A stretch of 61,134 nt of DNA, counting the filler, from Sluysia triapertura (lineage: Eukaryota), in assembly GCA_046118255.1 (NCBI GenBank). It is 5 parts of 5 records of this genome, joined end to end, with 100 filler letters (N's around TTAATTAATTAA, not from the genome) between each part and the next. Parts side by side here need not be neighbours in the genome. Positions count along the whole stretch, not along the records: positions 1 to 11,968 come from JBJNIA010151827.1; 4 more parts are not named here. The stretch is one strand, 5' to 3'. The position numbers and the translations under genes are program-made. Positions 1 to 48,531 of the stretch are shown one piece after another (positions within the stretch are counted from its first letter, which is position 1; the number at the start of each line of letters is the position of its first letter). A model generated the notes under the pieces. That model was given only the letters and a program-made list of their open reading frames with translations, was not told the origin of the DNA and did not search any database.

Positions 1-70
<70 letters not shown>
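1..70. repeat. (AAT)n microsatellite
   Basis: Perfect AAT run. Similar runs at ~1451-1508, 4141-4194, 30192-30233, 33322-33364 and 37237-37292. Confidence 0.98.
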
Positions 71-71
<1 letters not shown>

Positions 72-250
72 GTTTAACCTTTTGATTACTAAATTTTTAT
101 TTGATTTATTATTATAAAGTAACCAATAAAAATTGAGAATAACAATTTAATAGAAAATAATGTTAGTACAAAGCACTAAATTTAAAAATATTAGTTAAAT
201 TATGCTTTTTATTAACTTATATTACACAATATATACTATTTAATCTAGTG

Positions 251-1440
251 TGTGGTAGGCTACCAAAAGAGGGTTACACAAAAAGATGTCTTGCAAAAGT
301 TAGAGATTCAATATATGTAAGTGAATACAGTTTGCATACGCAAAACTAATTACATTTGTACTTTTTGAACACTCTTTAACACTAATTCTACCAAAGGTGT
401 TAAAAGACACCTTTTAACATATTTTAATTTGAAATTATTTTCTAAGATCATTTTTTTTCAATTCCTGTTTTTTACTTTTCGTATAATAAATTGTTATCAT
501 TTTTCTTCAGCTCATCTTAGACCTAAATATGCGTAGCTGGTATAGAAATAGGTATACACAAAATCGTGGTATTCAGAAGATGTACCGCTTCACTAACTTA
601 ATTAACACAGGTCGTCAAAAGGTTCAAGAGTTATAATCAATATCTATTGGCAAATGTAAATAACTAAGATTAATTAAAAAGTTTTTGTGTAGTAATATTT
701 AAAATTTAGCATAACTAAAAATCGAATGTATAATTTTACATAAACATCACTTATATATGAAATAACATCACAAACAATTAAATAAATTTAAATTTATTTA
801 CTAAATATTAAGTATAAAGTATAGCATTAAAAATAAACACAAATAATGTCTAATTTAATTGGCTGTACACCTAGGACATAACAGTTCACAAACAGATTCT
901 GGAACATAGGAATCTATTTTCTTCGAACATATCAAAAAAAGTCATAAAACATTTGTAAATAATCATTTAAAATCATGAAATTAAACACACATTTTCAAAA
1001 TTTTAGCAATTCAATCTTACCAAAATAGAAATCGTTCTTATAAAACGTTTTTGATAAAGATACTTTATATTATTACTTTTTAATCCATTTGTCTTTCCTT
1101 CTTAACATTCAATGGCACACCATTATTCTGACAGCTTGCACCAAATGACTCGTTATAACAATGATATGTTTAGTATATCATGAAGCTCTAGTCCACACAA
1201 TAATAAACCGAAATACATTCAAAGTACTACAAAACATACCAAATAAATTATAAAAACATAAAAATAACTAAATTTCTGACTTAAAACCTTTATAAAAGTT
1301 CTATTTGGAAAACCAACAAAATATTATTCAAAATATAATCATAGTAAATCGATATTTATCAAATTAATTGTTTCTACAATCATCAAATAATCGTCAAATT
1401 TAAGACATCAATTGTCTTCCAGGTTGAAAAGCATTTGTTT
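251..1440 (+). mobile_element. Putative end of a TGTGG-family element (right boundary unknown)
   Basis: Starts TGTGGTAGGCTACC, resembling the TGTGGTGGCCAAC ends elsewhere. Hairpin AAAGGTGT-taaaag-ACACCTTT at ~393-414. C/A-rich strand skew. Broken frame 'RFWNIGIYFL' loosely resembles 'RMYENIGYIYLL' of the 14609 copy. Confidence 0.4.
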
Positions 1441-1448
1441 ATTTGTAC

Positions 1449-1508
<60 letters not shown>

Positions 1509-2699
1509 GAGTATTATGAAATCATGCAGAAAATGCTAAATACATAGATTATTTGACTATCCATCATAAAGAAAAATTTGGAATATTTACAATACACTTA
1601 TAAAATCAAGTCAAGTCTAAATTCTGAAGCTTTAGGGTGCTAAATAAAAAGTAAAATTTAGATAATTTCCAAATAGTTCATTGTTAAAATATAACCAACT
1701 ATTTGTAGAGAAAATGTCTTGTTAGAGCCTTGAAAAGATATTGTATAAAAGATATTAATTTAGACAATGTCAGTACCCAAAAATAGAATTTATTTCTTCA
1801 TAGTCTTCAAGTCATTTGACGTTTCCTGTTAATCAGTTATATGTAACAAAACGAACATTTGCGTTTATGCATTTTCATTATCTAAGCGATATGTAGATAA
1901 GGTGTTGTATGAGATATTTTTTTATTTATTCGCACTTTTAAAATAAATTTAACATTTTAATTTCTTTGCCCATGTTTTAGAAATACTTGGTCGTACAAAC
2001 TTTTCAGGTAGACACATTTTAGACCCAATCCGCCCCATTACTAAGAATATAATAAAATTCTGTAATCTCATTTCATTGTAATAGAGTATTTATAATAATT
2101 ATAATTATAATGTAATAATTATAAATTTTGTCTCACCGTCTAACATGACGAAAACATTTTTATGATTTATTACTGTTTCGAATTTTGAAATTGTGAATTG
2201 TTTTATATAGAATTATGATTCATCCATACATTTTCAAAATCAAGATTATCGTTTGATTGTTGATTTTAAATGTGTGCTTGTAAAATGTAACCAAGTAACA
2301 AGAAAGCAACCACTGCATTTAAGTTTTAATATCTTCAAAAATACCTACATTAAAACAGAATAATTTTTACCAAGCCACATTTCACATTTTTGTTAGTGAG
2401 ACGTACTTTTGCTTCTAAACATTATACAATGCTCTATCTTTAGTGATTTAATCTTGAGTTATTTTCAATTTTTTCCGATTATTTGTCATATTCATTTTAA
2501 ATTTTGTAAATGTTTTGAGCGGAAACAATTTCTATTCGTTCAATCAGTGAACAAAACAAAGATGCATCTTCACAATGTGAATTCAGACGAACATACAAAA
2601 ATAATTGTTAAAATAGCGGTTTCTACCAAAACATAATTGACTTTGTAAGGTGTATTAATATTTAACTTTATCATTTCATTACTTACTATTGATCCAAAT

Positions 2700-3433
2700 T
2701 AGATTCACCGATTAATCAATGTAAGACAGTCTGATTATTGAATAAAGATATGGGGAACACAGGAATTCCCCAACTGTATTTCAGCGAAAATCGATAAAAG
2801 TATGTCATTTGTATCTTTCGCAAGAGTATTTATATAAAATTCATAGACGTTCCGCTAGAATTGTGTACTACTTATAAAAAAGCAGTTAATAAAAGTCAAA
2901 ATTGTTCAATTCTTATTTAGCAGACAAAATTCGTTATATTCATTGACCTCTTCGCAGAAAGTACGACTTAGTATGATCAAGTAAAAAAACTGAAAACGAC
3001 CACATTCAGAAAATCAATGATCATGGTGATAAATAGAATAACTGTTCCTTTTCTATGTCAGACTTTCCAACTTAAATATCATAATTTATGCAGGAGACCC
3101 TGTTACAGAAGTTAGAAACAGTTTTCATGTAGATTTTAGCGTTTGTTTTGTTTGTTACATTCTGGAAATTTAAATTTTGCCATGCCTACGCCAATCAGGA
3201 AGTATAAGTCAGCAGACGTTCTAAAATCGTTAGAAAAGCAAAGAAAACACTTTGCAGTTAGTGAAACTCCACGCCGTAGTTGTGTTGTGTGGGCATATGA
3301 TAAAACACTTGTTGGAAAGTATAGAAAAACAAAGACCACAAACGATTGTACAAAGTGTTGTAAATATGTTTGGTGTGTTTATTTACGTACCAAGAATATA
3401 ACCAATTCACAATTCATCTTCATAATTTATTAA
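2700..3433 (+). pseudogene. piggyBac transposase relic (C-terminal Cys-rich domain)
   Basis: RRSCVV...KTTNDCTKCCKYV resembles the piggyBac CRD. Near-identical DNA at ~40857-40910. Left boundary approximate. Confidence 0.65.
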
Positions 3434-4139
3434 ATTTAAATATTTCGTTTAATTAGTACTGTTTTGACATACTCAACTGCACCAATCAAAATATTCATGT
3501 ATACAAAATTAATATTAGAATAGATAAAAAAGCAAAAACAAAAATCAAAAATCAAAAAAATAAAAAAACAAAAAAGTATCTTCACTACCGTCGTTATGAA
3601 TACGAATTTTTAATTCTTAAAATAAACTAAAATATTCTTAGATGTACACTCTAAGAAAAGATGGGAAATTGATCATTTTAAAAATAGTTTACAAAAATTA
3701 TTGATTTTATACACTAAAAATTATGAGAATCAATGCGACTTACCAAAAACAATGATAAATAGATATCTTAGAAGAAATCTATTTATTAATTTAGTAAGAC
3801 CCTTCTATCAAATAAAATAATAATAAAACTGTTTACGTTACATTTTTTATACATACACAAATAACGTGTTTACCACTTCATCCCGAAAACATTAAACTAA
3901 AATATTTTCTTTATACAAGAAACATCATTTAGAAATGGAAAAATTGTATTTTTAGAAAGTAATATAAAATAAACTATTATACTAATGTTGTAATAAATCT
4001 TCAATTTCGTATTCTGGTGACGAATCGATCATAGAGGAATTATTTTTAATTTGATCATATTCTATTAAATTTAATATTTCTGAATTTGGAACAGATTCCA
4101 GTTTTATCGGCTTTGGTTTTGGAACTTCGTTTTTGTTAC

Positions 4140-4197
<58 letters not shown>

Positions 4198-4199
4198 AA

Positions 4200-4560
4200 G
4201 AGAAATTAAATTTACAAAATATAAATAAAACGTCACAAAAATTATTTAAAGTATTACAAAAAAATTTCAAAAATTAAATTTCATTCTAATATCTATTACT
4301 CCGTTGTCGCCGATAATGCGACATTACAAATATAAACTATAAATCAGTGTTTTGCTTACGTTATCAATTTAAAAGAATTCGTTAATGTTACCTATAATGT
4401 AATCTATATCAGTCACAAGGCTGGAGTGGAAAAAGTTTAAAATAATTTTTATTGTAGCTTTATAAGCTAAAAGAAATAACTTAAAAGCACTGGATTTCTG
4501 AGAAATTTCAAAGAAAAAGCTTAAAAAATCAAATAAGATAAAAAACTTACAAGTCAAATA
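4200..4560 (+). pseudogene. hAT transposase relic
   Basis: Broken frames give SVVADNA and CFAYVINL, matching the hAT TDNA and CxxH (CFAHxLNL) motifs. Confidence 0.45.
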
Positions 4561-4621
4561 GAAAAAGGAAAACTAAAATAGAATTAATTTGCAAGTATAT
4601 ATCGAACGGAAATACCTGTAT

Positions 4622-5054
4622 TGTTACGTTCACTCTTTACGCTTTGCTTACAGTCAATCTTATGTTAAATTTTATTATTAATCAATAATTCATAATATGT
4701 TTATAAATTTTTGTATAATATGTTTATAAATTTTTGTATAATATATTTAATACAAATCTTGATTCATTTAATTTAATGCAAATTAAGTAAGATTTTATTT
4801 TAAATTTTAATAATTTTAATACAATAATTTTAAATTCTTTTAATGTAAAGGAGTACGTTCGTTTTAATTTATTATCTTTGTTTTAATTTGTATTGTTTTC
4901 ATGATCCCAAGGTCATTCATTTTGTATAAATAGATAACTATTTTTACCATAATAAACCATAAGTAAATCTTTCTAAAAATCTTTCTTACTCCAAGAGAAA
5001 GAAAAGCTTCCGTAGCTATTTTGATTTCCAGAGGATCCCATTTTTGTTAAGACA
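4622..5054 (+). mobile_element. Solo LTR (~433 bp)
   Basis: TGTTACG...TAAGACA termini. TATAAATAG at ~4925 and AATAAA at 4951. Flanks GTAT/TTAT are an imperfect 4-bp TSD. Related sequence at ~28340-28460. Confidence 0.6.
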
Positions 5055-5308
5055 TTATCTCAGTTTTATATTATTAAGTCTTTTCACAGTATTTATAACT
5101 GTTTATTTAAAATCCACTTAAAATCTGAACATCATCTCGCTACTGCTTCAAAGTAGCATATTAAAATTATTTTGTAAAATCAATTATTTAAGAGATTATT
5201 CTAAGAAAAGATAATCTTTCCAAATTTATATCATAACCTTACATCTGTAGTAAGTTTTTATTCATTTGTTAATAAAATATTTTGCATTAATTGTTAATTT
5301 TTGACGAC

Positions 5309-5499
5309 AGGTTCTAGTAGGAATCTTATCAAAATCTACCAAAATTTCTTTTGTAAAAGGTTCGATTTAGAACCTAATTAAAATCTTTTTATAACCGATA
5401 AAGGTTCATTTTAGGAACCTTATTAAAATCATTAATTTAAAGGTTCAATTTAAGAACCAAATTAAACTATCAACATGTTCAAAGTAAGAACCTCATTAA
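5309..5499. repeat. Array of five palindromic repeats AGGTTC-N6/7-GAACCT-(t/a)ATTAAAATC with non-repetitive spacers
   Basis: Unit starts at 5309, 5358, 5402, 5441 and 5475. Confidence 0.85.
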
Positions 5500-5545
5500 C
5501 CCCTTAATGAACGCCCGTGTTAATACGTTTCTGCGCGTTAAGGGG
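5500..5545. mobile_element. 46-bp piggyBac-type mini element
   Basis: TTAA|CCCCTTAA...TTAAGGGG|TTAA, with a TTAA TSD. Inserted into the TTAA of the fifth palindromic repeat. Confidence 0.8.
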
Positions 5546-5640
5546 TTAAAATACAACTAAAGTGATTTATCATTTTTTGTATTAATAAGAAAATTGAATA
5601 TTAAAAAAGCTTTACCTGAAAGTAGTACATTTAATTAACG

Positions 5641-5743
5641 CCTCCATTTACTTAAAATTTTTGATAGAAAATCCAACGGCTGGCCCTAACCGGTAAGCCC
5701 AGTACGTTGTTGAACTCATGTTAAGCTAAGCGTTTTATTCTAG
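5641..5743 (+). ncRNA. Candidate structured RNA/cis-element, copy 1
   Basis: Homologous to 48434-48531. Stem CAACG-GCTGG / CCAGT-A-CGTTG has compensatory changes relative to copy 2. Confidence 0.55.
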
Positions 5744-6042
5744 AATCGTAGCTCACAGGAAGATATTTTGAATCCAACTAGAAGACGAAAGAGAATTATT
5801 ACGGTTATATGTTTTTTAAATTCTTACCTGTGTTAATAAAATACTAAATTTAGTCTTTTTATCGTTAAAACTGCCATGTTTAAAAGGCCTAAAGCCTAGT
5901 TTAGTAATTAAAAATGTTATTGTTTTAATGTTAAATTTTAATTGCTTTTTATTAAAAGAAATTCCTAATCCTTTTTAATATACAAATAAATAAAAATAAT
6001 TATAATTTATTAATTTTAAAATATAAAAAGCCTTCCCCTTCA

Positions 6043-7436
6043 AAGACGAAAGAGAATTAGGTTGCTAATAGTTTCTCAAGACGACAGTGAAGAAAATAAT
6101 GAACAAGAAAATATTGAAATTTGGAAGAAAATCGAAACAGGGTCCTTTCTTGGGAGACCAGCTGTTCATATTATTTTCAAAGTGTATCTTGTCAAGAGAA
6201 ACATTTTATTTACTGTTTGAAAACCGAATTACGGAACACATAAAATGTTTTGGGAAAAGAATAAAGTTTACATAGAGATAAATTAGAAGCATTTGTAGCT
6301 ATTTTGTATATACGTCGTGCATATGAGCATTAAAATGTCATAGTTTGTATGGAATAAGAAATGGGTATTTTCATTTCTTGCGCTTTTGATAAATTCGCTT
6401 TGGTATCAAAAGTTGACGAACAGATCTTCCCAACTAAAGTTAAATGTAGGTTCATCGATTACATATATGGAAAAAGACGAAACCTGACCGGCATCTATTT
6501 CACTTGGTGAGTTTGTGGTTTACTGGCATTAAACTTTTTCAGAAAAAACCTCTTTAGTTTGAACTCCCAAAATCTACAAAAATATAATAGGATAAAATGA
6601 AACCCTTCTCACTGCAACATGACACATCTTTAACAATTTATGAAAGTAAGCCAAACAAAAAAGTATTTTGACTAAGTTCAAGACATAAATCTGTGCAAGT
6701 GGAAGATAGCAATAAACGTCTTCAAGAAACAATTAAATTTTATAATAGCACAAAATTTGGGATTGATATAACTGATCAAATGGCTAGAAAATATAGTGTA
6801 AAATATAAATGCCGCAGATGGCCTATGAACGTATTTTATAATATCCTCGATTTGATCGGAATAAGAGCATTGGTTCTATACAAAGAAATGTTTTATTCCA
6901 GTTAGAAGAAGAACTCACAGCTGAGTATAAAGAACGCCAAGATAGAACAACAAATATGGCGACATATTCAACAGTAAGATCACTTCCTTTTCAAAAAGGA
7001 AAAAAGCAAATAAAAGGTAATAGAGAAATTAGAATTTGCTCCCAGTGTAAGAAATATGCATGCGGAAGGTTCAGCAACCATTCATATATTGAATACTGAA
7101 TAATGAAATTTCTTTTACAGCGTTTTATTATGATTATCATTTTTTATAATGAAGATTAAATTTTTTGTTGTGCCTTTTATACTTTTTATTTTTTAAATTA
7201 TTAAATTAAAACTCAATAACTAAATAAATTAAAAATATCGATATATTCTCCAATATTATCGCAAGATTACAATAAATTTTCTTTATAATAATAACAATAC
7301 AAATTATTCTTTAATAATAAATCTTTTAACAAATCACTATAAATCACAGCTTATCTATGATAAAGATTTTATAGACATGGATTATTTGACCCGTGCTGTT
7401 AAGAATAGGTATAGATAGACCGACGGTGTGTTTGGT
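6043..7436 (+). mobile_element. Degenerate piggyBac element
   Basis: ETIKFYNSTKFGIDITDQMARKYSVKYKCRRWPMNVFYNILDL at 6693-6905 is the PGBD catalytic C-terminal motif. CRD remnant at ~7035-7065. End ...GGTGTGTTTGGTG followed by TTAA at 7437-7440. Confidence 0.85.
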
Positions 7437-7784
7437 GTTAACATTTTATAATCTCGAAAACACCGACAAACTTTATTTGGACAGTTTAAATTTTGCTAGA
7501 AGGAACTAATGGAAGACCTTATTTAAAAATTTTAAGTTTAAATTCATGAATCGTGGCTGAAATACATTTAAATTACTGAATAGTAAGTGAATTTTATTGT
7601 ATACTCCAAGTTTATGAATTAATGAAGAAATTGTTAATGTATGTAATCGATTGATTGTAACTATATTTAGAAAAGTGTGTCTTATTAATTTGTACGATTT
7701 ATAAATATCAGTTTAAAATTTATTGATTAATTTTTAATATTCGTAAGATTAGGATAAGAACAAATTCTAGCATTCTTAATAATC

Positions 7785-7850
7785 TGCCAGGGTTTTTATA
7801 CTACGGGTCCGAATTATCTACCACTTAAATGGCAAAAGTGTAGAATAAAA
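7785..7850 (+). pseudogene. mariner transposase C-terminal scrap
   Basis: QGFYTTGPNYLPLKWQKC resembles the mariner FYxxGIxxLPxRWQKC motif. Confidence 0.5.
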
Positions 7851-9564
7851 CAATTCTTCATATTTGTAAATTTTCCTCTTTTGCTAGAAATTCTGATTTT
7901 GATTCCTGATTCTAATTTCATTTTACTGTTATATATTGTACCAGAAATTAAGATATATATGTATTACTGACAAATACTAATACTACTATTAAAGTATATA
8001 TTTCGTGAGTCGATTGAGACTAATTAAACATCTTATTTTCATTGTGATTATCGTTTAAGTAAAACAAACTTCAATGAAACATTTTATTATTATTGAAAAT
8101 TGTTTTAAGCAGTATTTTTTGTGTCAAATTTTTGTATTTTCTAAATACATTTTCTATATTTAACTTTATATATAACGAACAGTCTAATAAACATTTCTTC
8201 ATAAAACAAAAAAATGTGCTAAAGTATTTATTTTTTGAAATTATCTACTAATGTTTGATCCACTAAGCCTTCTTTGAGTTGACATTAGGTCTGTTTTTGA
8301 AACATTCAAGGCATCCAATTCGTAGTTTTTGTGTCTTTTCTTAACAAACCACTCTTACACTAAGCCATTAGGTTGGTGCATAAATTCGTGCGGTTTTATG
8401 TGTTGCATAGAAAACACACCAACTTCTTGTTTTAACTGATTTGAATTATCTAAATCATTTTAGGCTAACATTCACTTTCATTACTCTCCTTAAAATTCTA
8501 GATAAAAATGAACATTTTCGGCATCTACAGATTTTCATGTCGAACCATCTTTCTGGTGTCAACGTGGATTGAAGAATTTTTCGACAAAAAATCACCAAAC
8601 TTCTTCAAACTTGGGATTTACAAATGGCCAGAACGATGAAAGGAGGTGGTCGATTTTGGCGGAGAATATCTCACCGATTGAGACTGCAATATTTGTAAAG
8701 GAGTTTGAAGTCCAAACACCATTTGTTTTGTAGTTTAATAAAGATTATTAAATTTATATTATAACTGTAAACAAATATTAAATTATTATTGAATGAATTA
8801 AAATTATTAAGAAGTTCTAAATCAATTGTTAAAAGGTTATTAAAGATTAATTTATTTAGTCTTACAAAATCTTAACATTATTAAATTTTCTTTTATTAAA
8901 ATAAAAAAAATAAAATAAAAATAAAATCCGAGAAATGTATTATACATGAACTTTATGTAAATAATACGAATTTGCTTTAATAAACACAGTTTATGTAATA
9001 GTGGATGTTGATATATCTTTGACAATGTTACGATCCATACACTAGAACAAAATTTAAACAGATATGAACATAATGCACTAAAAATGATAATCACCAAAAT
9101 GTAGAAATAAGAATAAAATATGATCATATTTCTTTGAATAAGTTTTGTGTGACTAATATGACATAAAATAGTGATATACACAAGTGAGTTGGAACTAAAG
9201 TAATAAAATTAATGATAACAAAATTATTGATTAGTGAAATTACACATAAAACTATTAATGTAGCAGAATTAGTGAATGTGTGTGTGATGTGTGACAATAT
9301 TATTGTCTCTAGGATATTCAAGAAGGAACTTTTATGTTTAATATCGGCTCTAATTCATTACATGTAGCTATAAATTGTCAATGCAAGAAGACAAAAAATA
9401 AATAGTGATATTATCGCATTAGCTCTTTCAACTAGATCAGTGACATCTTTTTATAAACCTCCAAGAAATCTTATACACCACTTACGTATTAGCCATTAAG
9501 TGAGTAAGTCTAATATCGTAAGGGACTCGCGCAAAATCTAAATAAAACAATTAAATTAAAGATT

Positions 9565-9855
9565 TTAAATCTTCACATATATATAAATATTATCACCTAC
9601 TGTCTGAACTTTAGCATTATTGTTATTACATTCTTCTTTATCTACTTCATATCTATAATTATGTGTTCGAACTGCTTTGTATTTGCAGGAATTCCTTTTA
9701 GCTAAGATATCTTTTATTGAGTTGATACATAGAAAAGTATTGCCTAAATCTAACTTTAATTGAATTGAAGCAGGTAAACAATTCTTTAAATCATAAGAAA
9801 TGATTTCATACTTACTGCTAGATAATTCATTAACTTTACTTAGTATATTATTCAT
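9565..9855 (-). CDS. Intronless 96-aa ORF of unknown function (element cargo)
   Basis: ATG-to-stop ORF with normal complexity, downstream of the hairpin promoter module. Confidence 0.4.
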   Translation of the reverse strand: MNNILSKVNELSSSKYEIISYDLKNCLPASIQLKLDLGNTFLCINSIKDILAKRNSCKYKAVRTHNYRYEVDKEECNNNNAKVQTVGDNIYIYVKI

Positions 9856-10044
9856 ATTTTAGATCGATTAAGCATAAGACTTTTAACTAAAATGATCTTT
9901 TGAAAAATGTTCGTGACTATTGTTCAATTTGATTAACAGAAACAGACTCCAAATTTATTGAAATATTCTGTCTATATTCGTTTGATAAGAAATTCCTTGT
10001 ACGAAAATTTTTAAAAGTGTGATTAAAATTGTGATCATTTGTTG

Positions 10045-10157
10045 TTGACCAATCAAGTGAGAATATTTTAAATGATTATTTAATGGTCAATAAAAATTAC
10101 TGTCTGTCACCATGCAAATTTTCACAAAAACAAATAAAGTCTGAGACATAGTGACAG
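10045..10157. promoter_or_regulatory. Double-hairpin CCAAT module A
   Basis: IR TTGACCAATCAA/TTAATGGTCAA (10045-10090), then IR CTGTCACCATG/CATAGTGACAG (10104-10157). Confidence 0.5.
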
Positions 10158-10485
10158 GTATGAATTAATTTTATGATATATATAATTGAAAAACTGCCAT
10201 AATTTGTAGTTCGGATAACTAAAATTTGTTATGATATTTAATATAATGAAAATAATATAATTTTGATAATAATAATTAGTAATAATAATGATAATAAAAA
10301 TGTAATAATGTAATTAATAATAATAATAATAAAATAAAATTACGCTAATAACAATTAATAAAAATAAAATGGCATACATTTCATAAAAGTCTTCTTTTTC
10401 TTTATTCTTTTACAAGAACTTAATGATTATATATTTGTTACACATAATTCTGTTTTATATAGAATGTATATCATGCATGACTTTC

Positions 10486-10815
10486 TTAGAGTTCTTGCTT
10501 ATTTGTTCTTAACTCTTGTTGAATAAATAAGTTTCTTGTAGTTTCTAATTCTCTGAATGTTTCAATTACTTTACTAATCTTTAGCTCTTTATACAATGTT
10601 AAAGTAACTTCAGCTTGAAGTCGTTGAATTTGATGTCTGAGTTTCAAAATGATTGTAGAAGGAATAATGCACGTCGTAATAAAATAAAAGAAATAAAAGA
10701 AATATGAAAAGAAGTATAATAAAAAATTAATGAAGTTGGAGATGTTAAAATAAATTTCATTTATTTTATTAATATTTTGAAATTTAAAATGTAAATTTAA
10801 TGATTTTTCATGCAA
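10486..10815 (-). CDS. Terminal ORF with a hydrophobic segment and coiled-coil tail
   Basis: Starts ~80 bp inside the TGTGG end. FLLYFFSYFFYFFYF is followed by heptad-like LRHQIQRLQAEV...ELETTRN. Confidence 0.3.
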   Translation of the reverse strand: MHEKSLNLHFKFQNINKINEIYFNISNFINFLLYFFSYFFYFFYFITTCIIPSTIILKLRHQIQRLQAEVTLTLYKELKISKVIETFRELETTRNLFIQQELRTNKQEL

Positions 10816-11009
10816 TTAATAGTTGAAGTGTTGTAAAAATGTGACTTTTAGTGTAATGTGATGAATTAAAATTTTGAATGATAAAGTTGGCCACCACAAT
10901 TTGTTTTTTTCTAATGATTTAATAAATTCATTTTGTTATATGGAATTTTTTTCATGGTTTTTATTCTTAATCAGTATGCATTTTTCATAATTTTAAAAAA
11001 CCACAATTT

Positions 11010-11343
11010 GAAGTGAAGAAGTTATTATACACTCTTTTTGAATCTTTAAACTCATTTTTATTGAAAATATCAACTTTATTTTTTAAGAATTTTATTTATG
11101 ACTCTAAAAGGCTAGATCTCGCTGAGAGTATAAAAGCTCTTAATTTGGTCAATAAAAATAACTTTTCCTACTATTTTTTTCTTATTATTCATTATTCATT
11201 TAAGGGTTGAAAATTGTGAAGTAAATTTTAATAAAATTTGACATTAAAACAAAATGTTTTCTGAGTTTATTTATTATATTTTTGAAGCACCAGTTCCATT
11301 TTTTCAAAAAATGTGGGGATCATTATGTTAGATTGCCACCACA
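11010..11343 (-). mobile_element. Truncated TGTGG-family end
   Basis: Minus strand begins TGTGGTGGCAATCT at 11343 and replaces the mariner right TIR. Confidence 0.45.
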
Positions 11344-11968
11344 TTTTATTTCACAGTGATATATTTCGGACAGTGACATTTAATTAATTTTATTCAAAAA
11401 CATGTGATTATTATTATTATTATTATTCATTTTTATTGTTTGATATTATTATTCTATTAACATTCATTTTTATTAAAATATTATTTGATATCATTATTTT
11501 ATTAATTTACTTATTATTATAAATTAAAATTATATTATTAAAAAAATAAGAAAAATAATTATTAAAAAATCGTATATTAAAAATTAAAGAAAAATAATTA
11601 CTATTAAAAATCGTTATTAAAGAAAACAATTATTTAAATTGTTTTAAATATGGATTACAATATGGAGGTAAGTTAATTTAGTATTTAAACAGGTTAAATT
11701 TATGACAATAGGACTATAAGAAAATTTCGACAATAAATTTGGACAATAAAATTTCAACAATAAAAGAAAAACGAAGACGATTTGATATTCACTATGCAAT
11801 CCATGAAAAAGTAATTTATTTATGTATAGGCTTTCTTTAAGTTCTAATTTTAAACTAATAGAACATAAAATACGACTTAACTTTCTATAGTATATGTCAG
11901 ACCGTGAAAAGGCTGACTTAAAATCTTTTTAAACTCCATCGATCTAAGTATTATAGTTAAGGTCTAAA

Positions 11969-48433: not shown

Positions 48434-48531
48434 CCTCCATTTTTACTCTTACGATAAAATCCAACGCTTGGCCGTTAAGTCGGTAAGACCAAGACGTTGG
48501 TGAACTCACTGATATCTAAGTTTTATTCTAG
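48434..48531 (+). ncRNA. Candidate structured RNA/cis-element, copy 2
   Basis: CCAACG-CTTGG[CCG ttaagt CGG TAAGA]CCAAG-A-CGTTGG. Lies ~40 bp before a possible LTR end/PBS (AACA-TT-TGTTGGAG, ~48565-48578). Confidence 0.55.

What the first reader, a model, noticed from the sequence alone, without database searches (positions are those of the whole stretch)
5641..5743. Conserved ~100-nt structured element with compensatory base changes (second copy 48434-48531)
Seen: two diverged copies on different scaffolds keep CCTCCATTT, CCAACG, TGGCC, CGGTAAG, ACGTTG.TGAACTCA, CTAAG and TTTTATTCTAG. The stem covaries: CTTGG/CCAAG versus GCTGG/CCAGT (T-A to C-G, C-G to G.U), with a conserved bulged A, a small inner hairpin and a 5-nt TAAG(A/C) bulge. 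That bulge can also pair with upstream CTTA (TCTTAC/GTAAGA in copy 2), a possible pseudoknot. The G.U favours a plus-strand RNA. I cannot match it by eye to hammerhead, HDV, twister or pistol cores. Inference: an uncharacterised retroelement RNA motif (packaging, priming or dimerisation signal, or a new ribozyme).
Basis: partly seen in the sequence, partly recalled or inferred. Interest (0 to 1): 0.78.

Follow-up and report, generated by a model that had tools for sequence, protein, structure and literature searches.

The report
Retrotransposon LTR tRNA-primer docking module
The conserved ~100-nt structured motif is the U5 end of a retrotransposon long terminal repeat: a covarying hairpin flanked by short boxes complementary to the host tRNA that primes reverse transcription, which is a known kind of retroelement signal in a new and unusually clear form.

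Summary
Window 5641-5743 is the most conserved part of a ~1.1-kb repeat (about 4663-5757). Exact-pattern hits number 1184 for this hairpin type and 763 for a second, sequence-divergent but isomorphic type; reversed-pattern controls gave 0. The three-helix hairpin (5673-5710) shows compensatory changes in P2 within the first type and in P1 and P2 between types. Recurrent G.U pairs favour the + strand.

The repeat is an LTR, not a LINE/SINE tail, which was my first reading. In at least 150 loci, LTRs of many families end in ...ACA/GCA and are followed, after 8-10 nt, by an 18-nt primer-binding site complementary to a tRNA-Met(CAU) gene of this genome. One such locus continues into a gag-like ORF.

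The box just 3' of the hairpin (GAACUCAC) is the reverse complement of that tRNA's T-arm 5' half. An upstream box (GACCUCCA) complements tRNA nt ~40-47.

A prediction held. The second hairpin type carries GAACCCAA, which complements the tRNA-Lys T arm, and is followed by a tRNA-Lys PBS (12 hits, control 0).

The module is therefore a U5 signal for tRNA-primed reverse transcription, resembling the HIV-1 primer activation signal. The proposed pseudoknot and a ribozyme are not supported. TSDs, LTR pairs and the polypurine tract could not be checked.

The parts
4663..5757 (+). One LTR copy, apparently solitary. No PBS follows it and no TSD was recognised. It starts with TGTTAAA and ends with AGCTCACA. 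The 5' limit is approximate.
   Evidence: Homology to other copies runs from about 4665 to 5747-5757. The 3' end is sharp and shared. The body is 68-85% identical between copies, the last ~110 nt 92-97%.
5641..5646 (+). Box A, CCTCCA (GACCUCCA in other families). It is complementary to tRNA-Met nt ~40-47 (UGGAGGUC).
   Evidence: An ACCTCCA-like box lies 25-35 nt upstream of the hairpin in 45 of 76 copies, against 2.2 in shuffles. The tRNA sequence is and its reverse complement.
5673..5710 (+). Three-helix hairpin: P1 5673-5678/5705-5710, P2 5679-5683/5699-5703, P3 5684-5685/5692-5693. It has a UAAGC bulge at 5694-5698 and a bulged A at 5704.
   Evidence: Pair counts and controls, RNAalifold, MFE of the hairpin alone, and the isomorphic second superfamily.
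5712..5719 (+). PAS-like box, GAACTCAT in this copy (family majority GAACTCAC). It is the reverse complement of tRNA-Met nt 49-56 (GUGAGUUC: T-stem 5' strand plus UUC).
   Evidence: 49 of 82 distinct copies have GAACTCAC and 9 have GGACTCAC, which keeps a G.U pair.
5734..5742 (+). TTTATTCTA, the 5' strand of a U5 inverted-repeat stem. In full elements its partner (TA)GAATAAA is the first internal sequence, just 5' of the PBS. That partner is absent after this solitary copy.
   Evidence: A TTATTY box lies 15-30 nt past the hairpin in 69 of 76 copies, against 21 in shuffles. The junctions ...ACA|(TA)GAATAAAC|TGGTGCCC are listed.
5750..5757 (+). LTR 3' terminus AGCTCACA (ends in CA). Unique flank starts at 5758.
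   Evidence: Copies share sequence up to ...GCA or ...TCACA and differ beyond it.

Best explanation
Window 4663-5757 is a long terminal repeat of an LTR retrotransposon, and the finding is its U5 end. In the genomic RNA, the R-U5-PBS leader carries in 5'-to-3' order:
1. box A;
2. the covarying hairpin;
3. an 8-9-nt box directly 3' of the hairpin;
4. a stem that pairs a U5 box with the first internal nucleotides, with the LTR terminus in its loop;
5. an 18-nt primer-binding site (PBS).

Three of these are complementary to three separate parts of one host tRNA, which is tRNA-Met(CAU) for this superfamily:
- the PBS pairs with the last 15 encoded nt plus CCA;
- the post-hairpin box pairs with the T-arm 5' half (nt 49-56);
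- box A pairs with nt ~40-47.

Shown: the LTR-PBS junctions, the three complementarities, and their switch to tRNA-Lys in the second superfamily.

Inferred: the boxes unfold and hold the primer tRNA so that reverse transcription starts efficiently, as proposed for the HIV-1 primer activation signal. The hairpin would act as the rigid spacer or protein-docking element that presents the two boxes to adjacent tRNA segments.
For: 1. Junction to a PBS. CTGGTGCCCAGAGTGAGGACCAG occurs 672 times with at most 2 mismatches (control 0). At least 150 of these lie 45-75 nt after ACGTTGNTG of many different families, always as ...ACA/GCA + (TA)GAATAAAC + TGG.... About 26 of the first 50 exact units listed reappear.

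2. Primer identity. TGGTGCCCAGAGTGAGGA is the reverse complement of the 3' end (+CCA) of a tRNA gene with a CAT anticodon loop at C215247:3129-3170.

3. Coding sequence downstream. In L017 the order is LTR end, PBS, ~470-nt leader, then an ORF whose best Pfam hit is Retrotrans_gag (E 3.4e-4). LTR-type RT hits are abundant in the genome.

4. Two further complementarities. GAACTCAC and GACCTCCA are both present in the reverse complement of the known 45 nt of that tRNA. By chance this is about 6e-4 for the 8-mer alone.

5. A prediction that held. The second superfamily has GAACCCAA/GGACCCAA after its hairpin, complementary to the tRNA-Lys(UUU) T arm seen in L085/L086. It is followed 55-85 nt later by TGGCGCCCGAA, the tRNA-Lys PBS: 12 hits, control 0. 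Its own stem, ATAATTGTTC/GAACAATTAT, sits at the same place.

6. Hairpin covariation and G.U pairs that work only on the + strand.

7. Conservation pattern. The U3-like body is family-specific (72 first-look candidates) while the U5 module is shared (2026 candidates). Contigs of a DNA run diverge exactly at 5668/5669 and 5718.
Against: - No target-site duplication was found for the few copies where both ends are in hand.
- No pair of matching LTRs, no polypurine tract and no pol gene was linked to a module-bearing LTR.
- The gag hit is below Pfam's cut-off (21.2 against 24.1 bits), comes from one locus, and that ORF is frameshifted.
- The spacer between LTR end and PBS (8-10 nt) is rather long.
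- Box A for the second superfamily rests on one copy (L097).
- The tRNA-box pairings are inferred from complementarity only. No RNA data exist for this organism, and even the HIV-1 PAS interaction is disputed in probing studies (PMC1865047, discussion).
- Nothing shows what the hairpin itself binds.
Confidence: 0.72

Rival explanations
1. It is the same LTR U5 region, but the hairpin is a packaging or dimerisation signal bound by Gag/nucleocapsid. The tRNA-complementary boxes beside it would then be an independent feature.
For: The hairpin keeps unpaired GGUAAG/GGUAAA and a bulged purine across both superfamilies although their primers differ. So these bases do not track the tRNA. I found no complementarity between the hairpin loops and the known 45 nt of tRNA-Met.
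Against: The hairpin is always wedged directly between the two tRNA boxes, with the PAS-like box starting 1-2 nt after P1. In retroviruses, packaging signals usually lie downstream of the PBS (general knowledge). No palindromic loop suited to kissing dimers is conserved.
Confidence: 0.13
2. It is the 3' tail of LINE-dependent non-autonomous retroposons (SINE-like), recognised by a LINE reverse transcriptase for target-primed reverse transcription. This was my working idea up.
For: The 3' end is sharp and lacks poly(A), 5' extents vary, copies are non-coding, no TSDs are seen, and a NeSL-like LINE is very abundant.
Against: None of the 40 LINE 3' regions carries the module in sense orientation. 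The 'tRNA-like tails' of that LINE are target-site flanks: L080 sits inside a tRNA-Tyr gene. The module is followed by a tRNA PBS and gag in full copies. The excess of tail over body is explained by family-specific U3.
Confidence: 0.04
3. It is a self-cleaving ribozyme or RNA-processing signal that defines the element's RNA end.
For: It is a compact conserved structure with invariant unpaired bases. A stem (TTTATTCTA/TAGAATAAA) brackets the exact LTR end.
Against: No Rfam ribozyme family matches at E up to 10. The LTR end is made by reverse transcription and integration, not by RNA cleavage. The variable loop holds no conserved catalytic core.
Confidence: 0.02
4. It is a DNA-level signal, such as an integrase or other recombinase binding site, or a single-stranded DNA hairpin of a rolling-circle element.
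For: It is an inverted repeat near an element terminus. Both strands fold, and the minus strand is even slightly more stable for two variants.
Against: Conserved G.U pairs would be A.C mismatches on the other strand (pair 13-45: 59 GU, 9 AU; G.U pairs also in P2 of superfamily 2). The hairpin lies 45-85 nt from the end, beyond usual att sites. Helitron TC/CTRR termini are absent.
Confidence: 0.03

Closest known systems
HIV-1 primer activation signal (PAS) and anti-PAS (PMC1865047, PMC3675109, PMC3185550)
   Same: An 8-nt motif in the leader upstream of the PBS is complementary to the T-arm of the primer tRNA. It has the same non-colinear topology relative to the PBS, and PAS and PBS change together when the primer changes.
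   Different: This is an invertebrate-type LTR retrotransposon, not a retrovirus. The primers are tRNA-Met(CAU) and tRNA-Lys(UUU). There is a third complementary box (box A, against tRNA nt ~40-47), and a dedicated covarying hairpin sits between the boxes. The box is not obviously masked by pairing. Function is untested.
Avian retrovirus U5-IR stem, U5-leader stem and U5-T-loop interaction (recalled from Aiyar, Cobrinik, Leis and colleagues; cited as ref. 3 in PMC1865047; not read here)
   Same: A stem made of U5 sequence next to the PBS, plus a short U5 stretch pairing with the primer's T arm.
   Different: Here the stem joins a U5 box to the first 8-10 internal nucleotides and encloses the LTR terminus. 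The sequences are unrelated.
Yeast Ty1 and Ty3 extended primer complementarity (from memory, not checked here)
   Same: An LTR retrotransposon RNA pairs with more of the primer tRNA than the 3' end alone.
   Different: In Ty1 the extra boxes lie downstream of the PBS and pair with initiator tRNA-Met T and D arms. Here they lie upstream in U5 and flank a hairpin.
Stringent-type LINE/SINE 3' tail stem-loops, such as eel UnaL2 (PMC1636434) and zebrafish ZfL2 (PMC4176376)
   Same: A conserved hairpin with functionally important bulges near a retroelement end, presumably read by the reverse-transcription machinery.
   Different: Those lie at the RNA 3' end and are bound by LINE ORF2p for target-primed synthesis. 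This one lies in the 5' leader of an LTR element beside a tRNA PBS. No LINE shares it.

Membership tests
LTR of an LTR retrotransposon (U5 region) | A primer-binding site complementary to a host tRNA 3' end lies just inside the 5' LTR | tested here: met
   At least 150 LTR-end/PBS junctions. The PBS is an 18-nt complement of tRNA-Met(CAU). The second superfamily has a tRNA-Lys PBS.
LTR of an LTR retrotransposon (U5 region) | Termini 5'-TG...CA-3' | tested here: met
   All families end in ...ACA or ...GCA. The 5' starts TGTTGTG and TGTTAAA were seen in only a few copies.
LTR of an LTR retrotransposon (U5 region) | gag/pol coding region follows the PBS | tested here: inconclusive
   One locus (L017) has a frameshifted ORF whose best hit is Retrotrans_gag, E 3.4e-4, below the cut-off. 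No pol gene was linked.
LTR of an LTR retrotransposon (U5 region) | Two direct LTR copies flank the internal region, with a polypurine tract before the 3' LTR | not tested
The contigs are short and break in the repeat.
LTR of an LTR retrotransposon (U5 region) | 4-6-bp target-site duplication | tested here: inconclusive
   No consistent TSD in the few old copies with both ends. One possible AATAG/ATAG in L026.
Retroviral-type primer activation signal | A motif upstream of the PBS is complementary to the primer tRNA's T-arm 5' half | tested here: met
   GAACUCAC(G) against tRNA-Met GUGAGUUC. GAACCCAA against tRNA-Lys UUGGGUUC.
Retroviral-type primer activation signal | The motif co-varies with the PBS when the primer tRNA differs | tested here: met
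   I predicted a tRNA-Lys PBS for superfamily 2 from its post-hairpin box. It was found 12 times, control 0.
Retroviral-type primer activation signal | The motif enhances tRNA-primed initiation | not testable with these tools
   This needs primer-extension assays.
LINE/SINE shared 3' tail | The same tail is present at the 3' end of an autonomous LINE | tested here: not met
   40 3' regions of the abundant NeSL-like LINE lack it in sense orientation. No RT ORF lies upstream of any module copy.
Known Rfam families, including hammerhead, HDV-like, twister, pistol, hatchet and tRNA | A covariance-model match | tested here: not met
   No hit at the locus at E up to 10, nor in other copies and their flanks. 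ARAGORN found none.

The most novel reading that the evidence does not exclude
The U5 module is a three-site 'primer clamp'. Box A and the post-hairpin box pair with adjacent stretches of the primer tRNA (nt ~40-47 and 49-56), and the rigid hairpin bridges the far ends of the resulting stacked helices. The tRNA would thus be held fully unfolded on the template before the PBS duplex is extended. If so, natural switches between tRNA-Met and tRNA-Lys lineages in one genome give comparative evidence for the disputed PAS mechanism. They would also define a new RNA architecture for primer selection in LTR retrotransposons.
Probability: 0.35. Interest if true: 0.6.

Novelty: new variant of a known kind. 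Interest (0 to 1): 0.4.

Why it matters
It turns an apparently mysterious structured RNA into a readable part of retroelement biology. It also offers something useful. One genome holds two large LTR lineages with isomorphic U5 hairpins. Their flanking boxes and PBS switch together from tRNA-Met to tRNA-Lys.

That is the kind of natural covariation that the primer-activation-signal model, worked out and still debated for HIV-1, has lacked outside retroviruses.

Practically, the 50-nt module is the main reason this assembly breaks into short contigs. It is also a handy marker for annotating LTRs and primer usage in this AT-rich genome.

Tried and rejected
**Readings tried and rejected**
1. LINE/SINE 3'-tail reading. 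I held it until and rejected it for the reasons given under the rival explanations.
2. A shared TTTGCA terminal motif between the module and the NeSL-like LINE. Withdrawn: those LINE 'tails' are tRNA-gene target flanks.
3. Template-jump chimeras to explain the junctions in L034 and L097. Simple LTR insertion into LINE copies explains them.
4. The GGTGCCC unit as the 5' head of the same element, or as a ribozyme. It is the PBS, and Rfam finds nothing there.
5. The pseudoknot between the UAAG bulge and an upstream CUUA. Not supported.
6. Similarity to tRNA, 5S rRNA, spliced-leader RNA or pistol, judged by eye. There is no model support, so I dropped it.

**Searches that gave nothing**
7. Metagenome scan for the module: no hit.
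8. Literature search for the motif strings: nothing relevant among the papers listed.
9. TSD search: nothing consistent.
10. RNA evidence: only one DNA run, held as contigs. No empty-site allele was seen.

**Tools and limits**
12. Relatives of the LINE protein are at most 39% identical and unnamed, so the organism was not identified.

The only model made is a 55-position profile of the U5 motif.

Full report
**Setting.** The piece (window 1-11968, contig C151827 of a 619-Mb assembly in 263,945 contigs) is 19-32% G+C and has no long ORFs. The organism was not identified. No RNA run is available; the only run found is DNA held as contigs.

**Observation.**
- The stretch has no Rfam match at E up to 10, no tRNA, and as a whole folds no better than shuffles on either strand.
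- It is highly repeated. A genome search gave 2026 first-look candidates, and the 40 scored were 92-100% identical over the 103 nt.
- The flanking ~1 kb upstream is only 68-85% identical between copies, and homology stops sharply at 5747-5757.
- A probe from the body (4840-5140) has only 72 candidates.
- Contigs of the DNA run diverge exactly at 5668/5669 and at 5718, and summed contig depth peaks there (depth is not a copy number).

**Structure.** The core pattern CCAACG..CGGTAAG..ACGTTG occurs 1184 times against 0 for the reversed control. Its flanks differ between subfamilies while the 39-nt core plus GTGAACTCAC stay identical.

I collected 82 distinct copies from many families. I scored a hairpin of P1 (6 bp), P2 (5-6 bp) and P3 (2-3 bp), with a bulged A and a 5-nt UAAGN bulge.
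- 89.6% of cells are paired.
- The covariation score is 0.148 against 0.077 for shuffles (0 of 500 reach it) and at most 0.055 for slid partners.
- Three P2 pairs change on both sides.

RNAalifold recovers the helices on its own, and the isolated hairpin folds as drawn.

A covariance model then found diverged copies with P1 CCUACG/CGUAGG, P2 GAACG/CGUUU and a UAAAU bulge. This second superfamily has 763 pattern hits against 0 for the control. Its P2 variants TGAACG/CGTTTA, CAGACG/CGTTTG and CACTCG/CGATTG still pair.

Conserved G.U pairs occur only in the + orientation: pair 13-45 is GU in 59 copies and AU in 9, and superfamily 2 also has G.U pairs in P2. The proposed pseudoknot fails: CTTA is upstream in 17 of 76 copies against 27 in shuffles.

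**First reading, later rejected.** The sharp 3' end without poly(A), variable 5' extents, lack of ORFs and lack of TSDs suggested LINE-dependent retroposons.
- I found an abundant native LINE on C227447. It encodes Ulp1 protease, RT, a CCHC knuckle and a restriction-like endonuclease. Its best solved relatives are R2 proteins, so it is NeSL-like as in PMC4640811.
- None of 40 of its 3' regions carries the module in sense orientation.
- Its 'tRNA-like tails' turned out to be target flanks. The copy in L080 sits inside a tRNA-Tyr gene, next to an intact one.

**What it is.** Five module copies of different families in my loci are followed by the same sequence, (TA)GAATAAAC then TGGTGCCCAGAGTGAGGACCAG.
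- Genome-wide this unit occurs 672 times. At least 150 of these lie 45-75 nt after the hairpin, across dozens of families that all end in ...ACA or ...GCA.
- TGGTGCCCAGAGTGAGGA is the reverse complement of the last 15 nt plus CCA of a tRNA gene with anticodon loop CTCATAA, that is tRNA-Met(CAU), at C215247:3129-3170.
- In L017 the order is repeat end, this primer-binding site, a ~470-nt leader, then an ORF whose best Pfam hit is Retrotrans_gag (weak, E 3.4e-4).
- LTR-type RT matches dominate the genome's RT hits.

So the repeat is an LTR and the finding is its U5 end. The family-specific 'body' is U3, which explains the excess of module copies over body copies. The junctions with LINE fragments in L034 and L097 are LTR insertions into LINE copies.

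**How it probably works.** The box that starts 1-2 nt after P1 is GAACUCAC(G), exact in 49 of 82 copies and GGACUCAC in 9 more. It is the reverse complement of tRNA-Met nt 49-56, the T-stem 5' strand plus UUC.

Box A (GACCUCCA; CCTCCA at 5641-5646) lies 25-35 nt upstream of the hairpin in 45 of 76 copies against 2.2 in shuffles. It is the reverse complement of tRNA nt ~40-47.

The conserved TTTATTCT(A) box pairs with (T)AGAATAAA, the first internal nucleotides. This makes a stem just 5' of the PBS with the LTR terminus in its loop.

I then tested a prediction. Superfamily 2 has GAACCCAA/GGACCCAA after its hairpin. That is complementary to the T arm UUGGGUUC of the tRNA-Lys(UUU) sequence seen as a LINE target flank in L085/L086. 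It should therefore use a tRNA-Lys PBS. CGTAGG followed 55-85 nt later by TGGCGCCCGAA occurs 12 times against 0 for the control. A different but equivalently placed stem, ATAATTGTTC/GAACAATTAT, precedes the PBS. Box A in the one superfamily-2 copy with upstream sequence (GACCUUCAG, L097) matches tRNA-Lys CUGAGGGUC with one G.U pair.

The complementarities and their joint switch are shown. Two things are inferred by analogy with the HIV-1 primer activation signal, an 8-nt leader motif complementary to the T arm that enhances primer use (PMC1865047): that the boxes pair with the tRNA during initiation, and that the hairpin is the scaffold presenting them.

**Gaps.**
- No TSDs were found.
- The role of the invariant GGUAAR bulge is unexplained. 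It does not follow the tRNA, so a protein contact or a packaging role remains possible.

**Verdict.** The element is not a new class of RNA. It is the U5 primer-docking region of LTR retrotransposons, a new variant of a known kind, of moderate interest because of the clean co-variation of hairpin-flanking boxes with primer identity.

Noticed in passing
window 5500-5545 (flanking TTAA at 5496-5499 and 5546-5549): A 46-bp insert with CCCCTTAA...TTAAGGGG inverted ends at a TTAA site. It is absent from the otherwise 95%-identical copies L010, L014 and L016. It looks like a piggyBac-type MITE stub or excision remnant inside this LTR copy.
   Followed up: partly
G000:C227447:5415-8735 (L115+L070) and about 3900 first-look relatives: A very abundant NeSL-like LINE encoding Ulp1 protease (PF02902), RT, a CCHC knuckle and a restriction-like endonuclease. 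The nearest database relatives are only 39% identical, and the best solved relatives are R2 proteins.
   Followed up: partly
L080:100-200 and 723-808; L085, L086, L078 and others: Copies of that LINE sit inside tRNA genes or tRNA-like sequences. One is in a tRNA-Tyr gene beside an intact intron-bearing tRNA-Tyr gene. Others sit in tRNA-Lys(UUU), a tRNA-Ala-like sequence, and a high-copy tRNA-like unit ending in ...GTCTAACA. This is the target specificity reported for planarian LIN families.
   Followed up: partly
L069, L071-L074 (contigs C222240, C221406, C229359, C244070, C232333): G+C-rich contigs carry intact L2-like and RTE-like LINE ORFs that look vertebrate-like and unlike the AT-rich host genome. 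This could be host or contaminant DNA in the assembly, or horizontal transfer. I do not take them for human and did not pursue them.
   Followed up: no
window 5346-5470: Three tandem hairpins, AAAGGTTC-N6-7-GAACC, lie in the U3-like part of the LTR. Similar hairpins occur in the CTTGG-type families (L049, L056). Their function is unknown.
   Followed up: no
G000:C63639:591-615, C87077:5180-5204, C196190:101-125: In three elements the complementarity to tRNA-Met runs on from the 18-nt PBS through the T loop to the T-stem 5' strand, at least 25 nt in all. It is as if more of the primer had been copied.
   Followed up: no
window 1-70, 1450-1510, 4140-4200, 11408-11427; several LTR junctions (L013, L016, L119, L145): (AAT)n/(ATT)n microsatellites are frequent and often abut LTR ends. 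I did not test whether this exceeds chance.
   Followed up: no
window 3872-3950: A weak RAGATH-27-like match (27.4 bits against a gathering score of 76.1, E 2.9). Most likely chance in AT-rich sequence.
   Followed up: no
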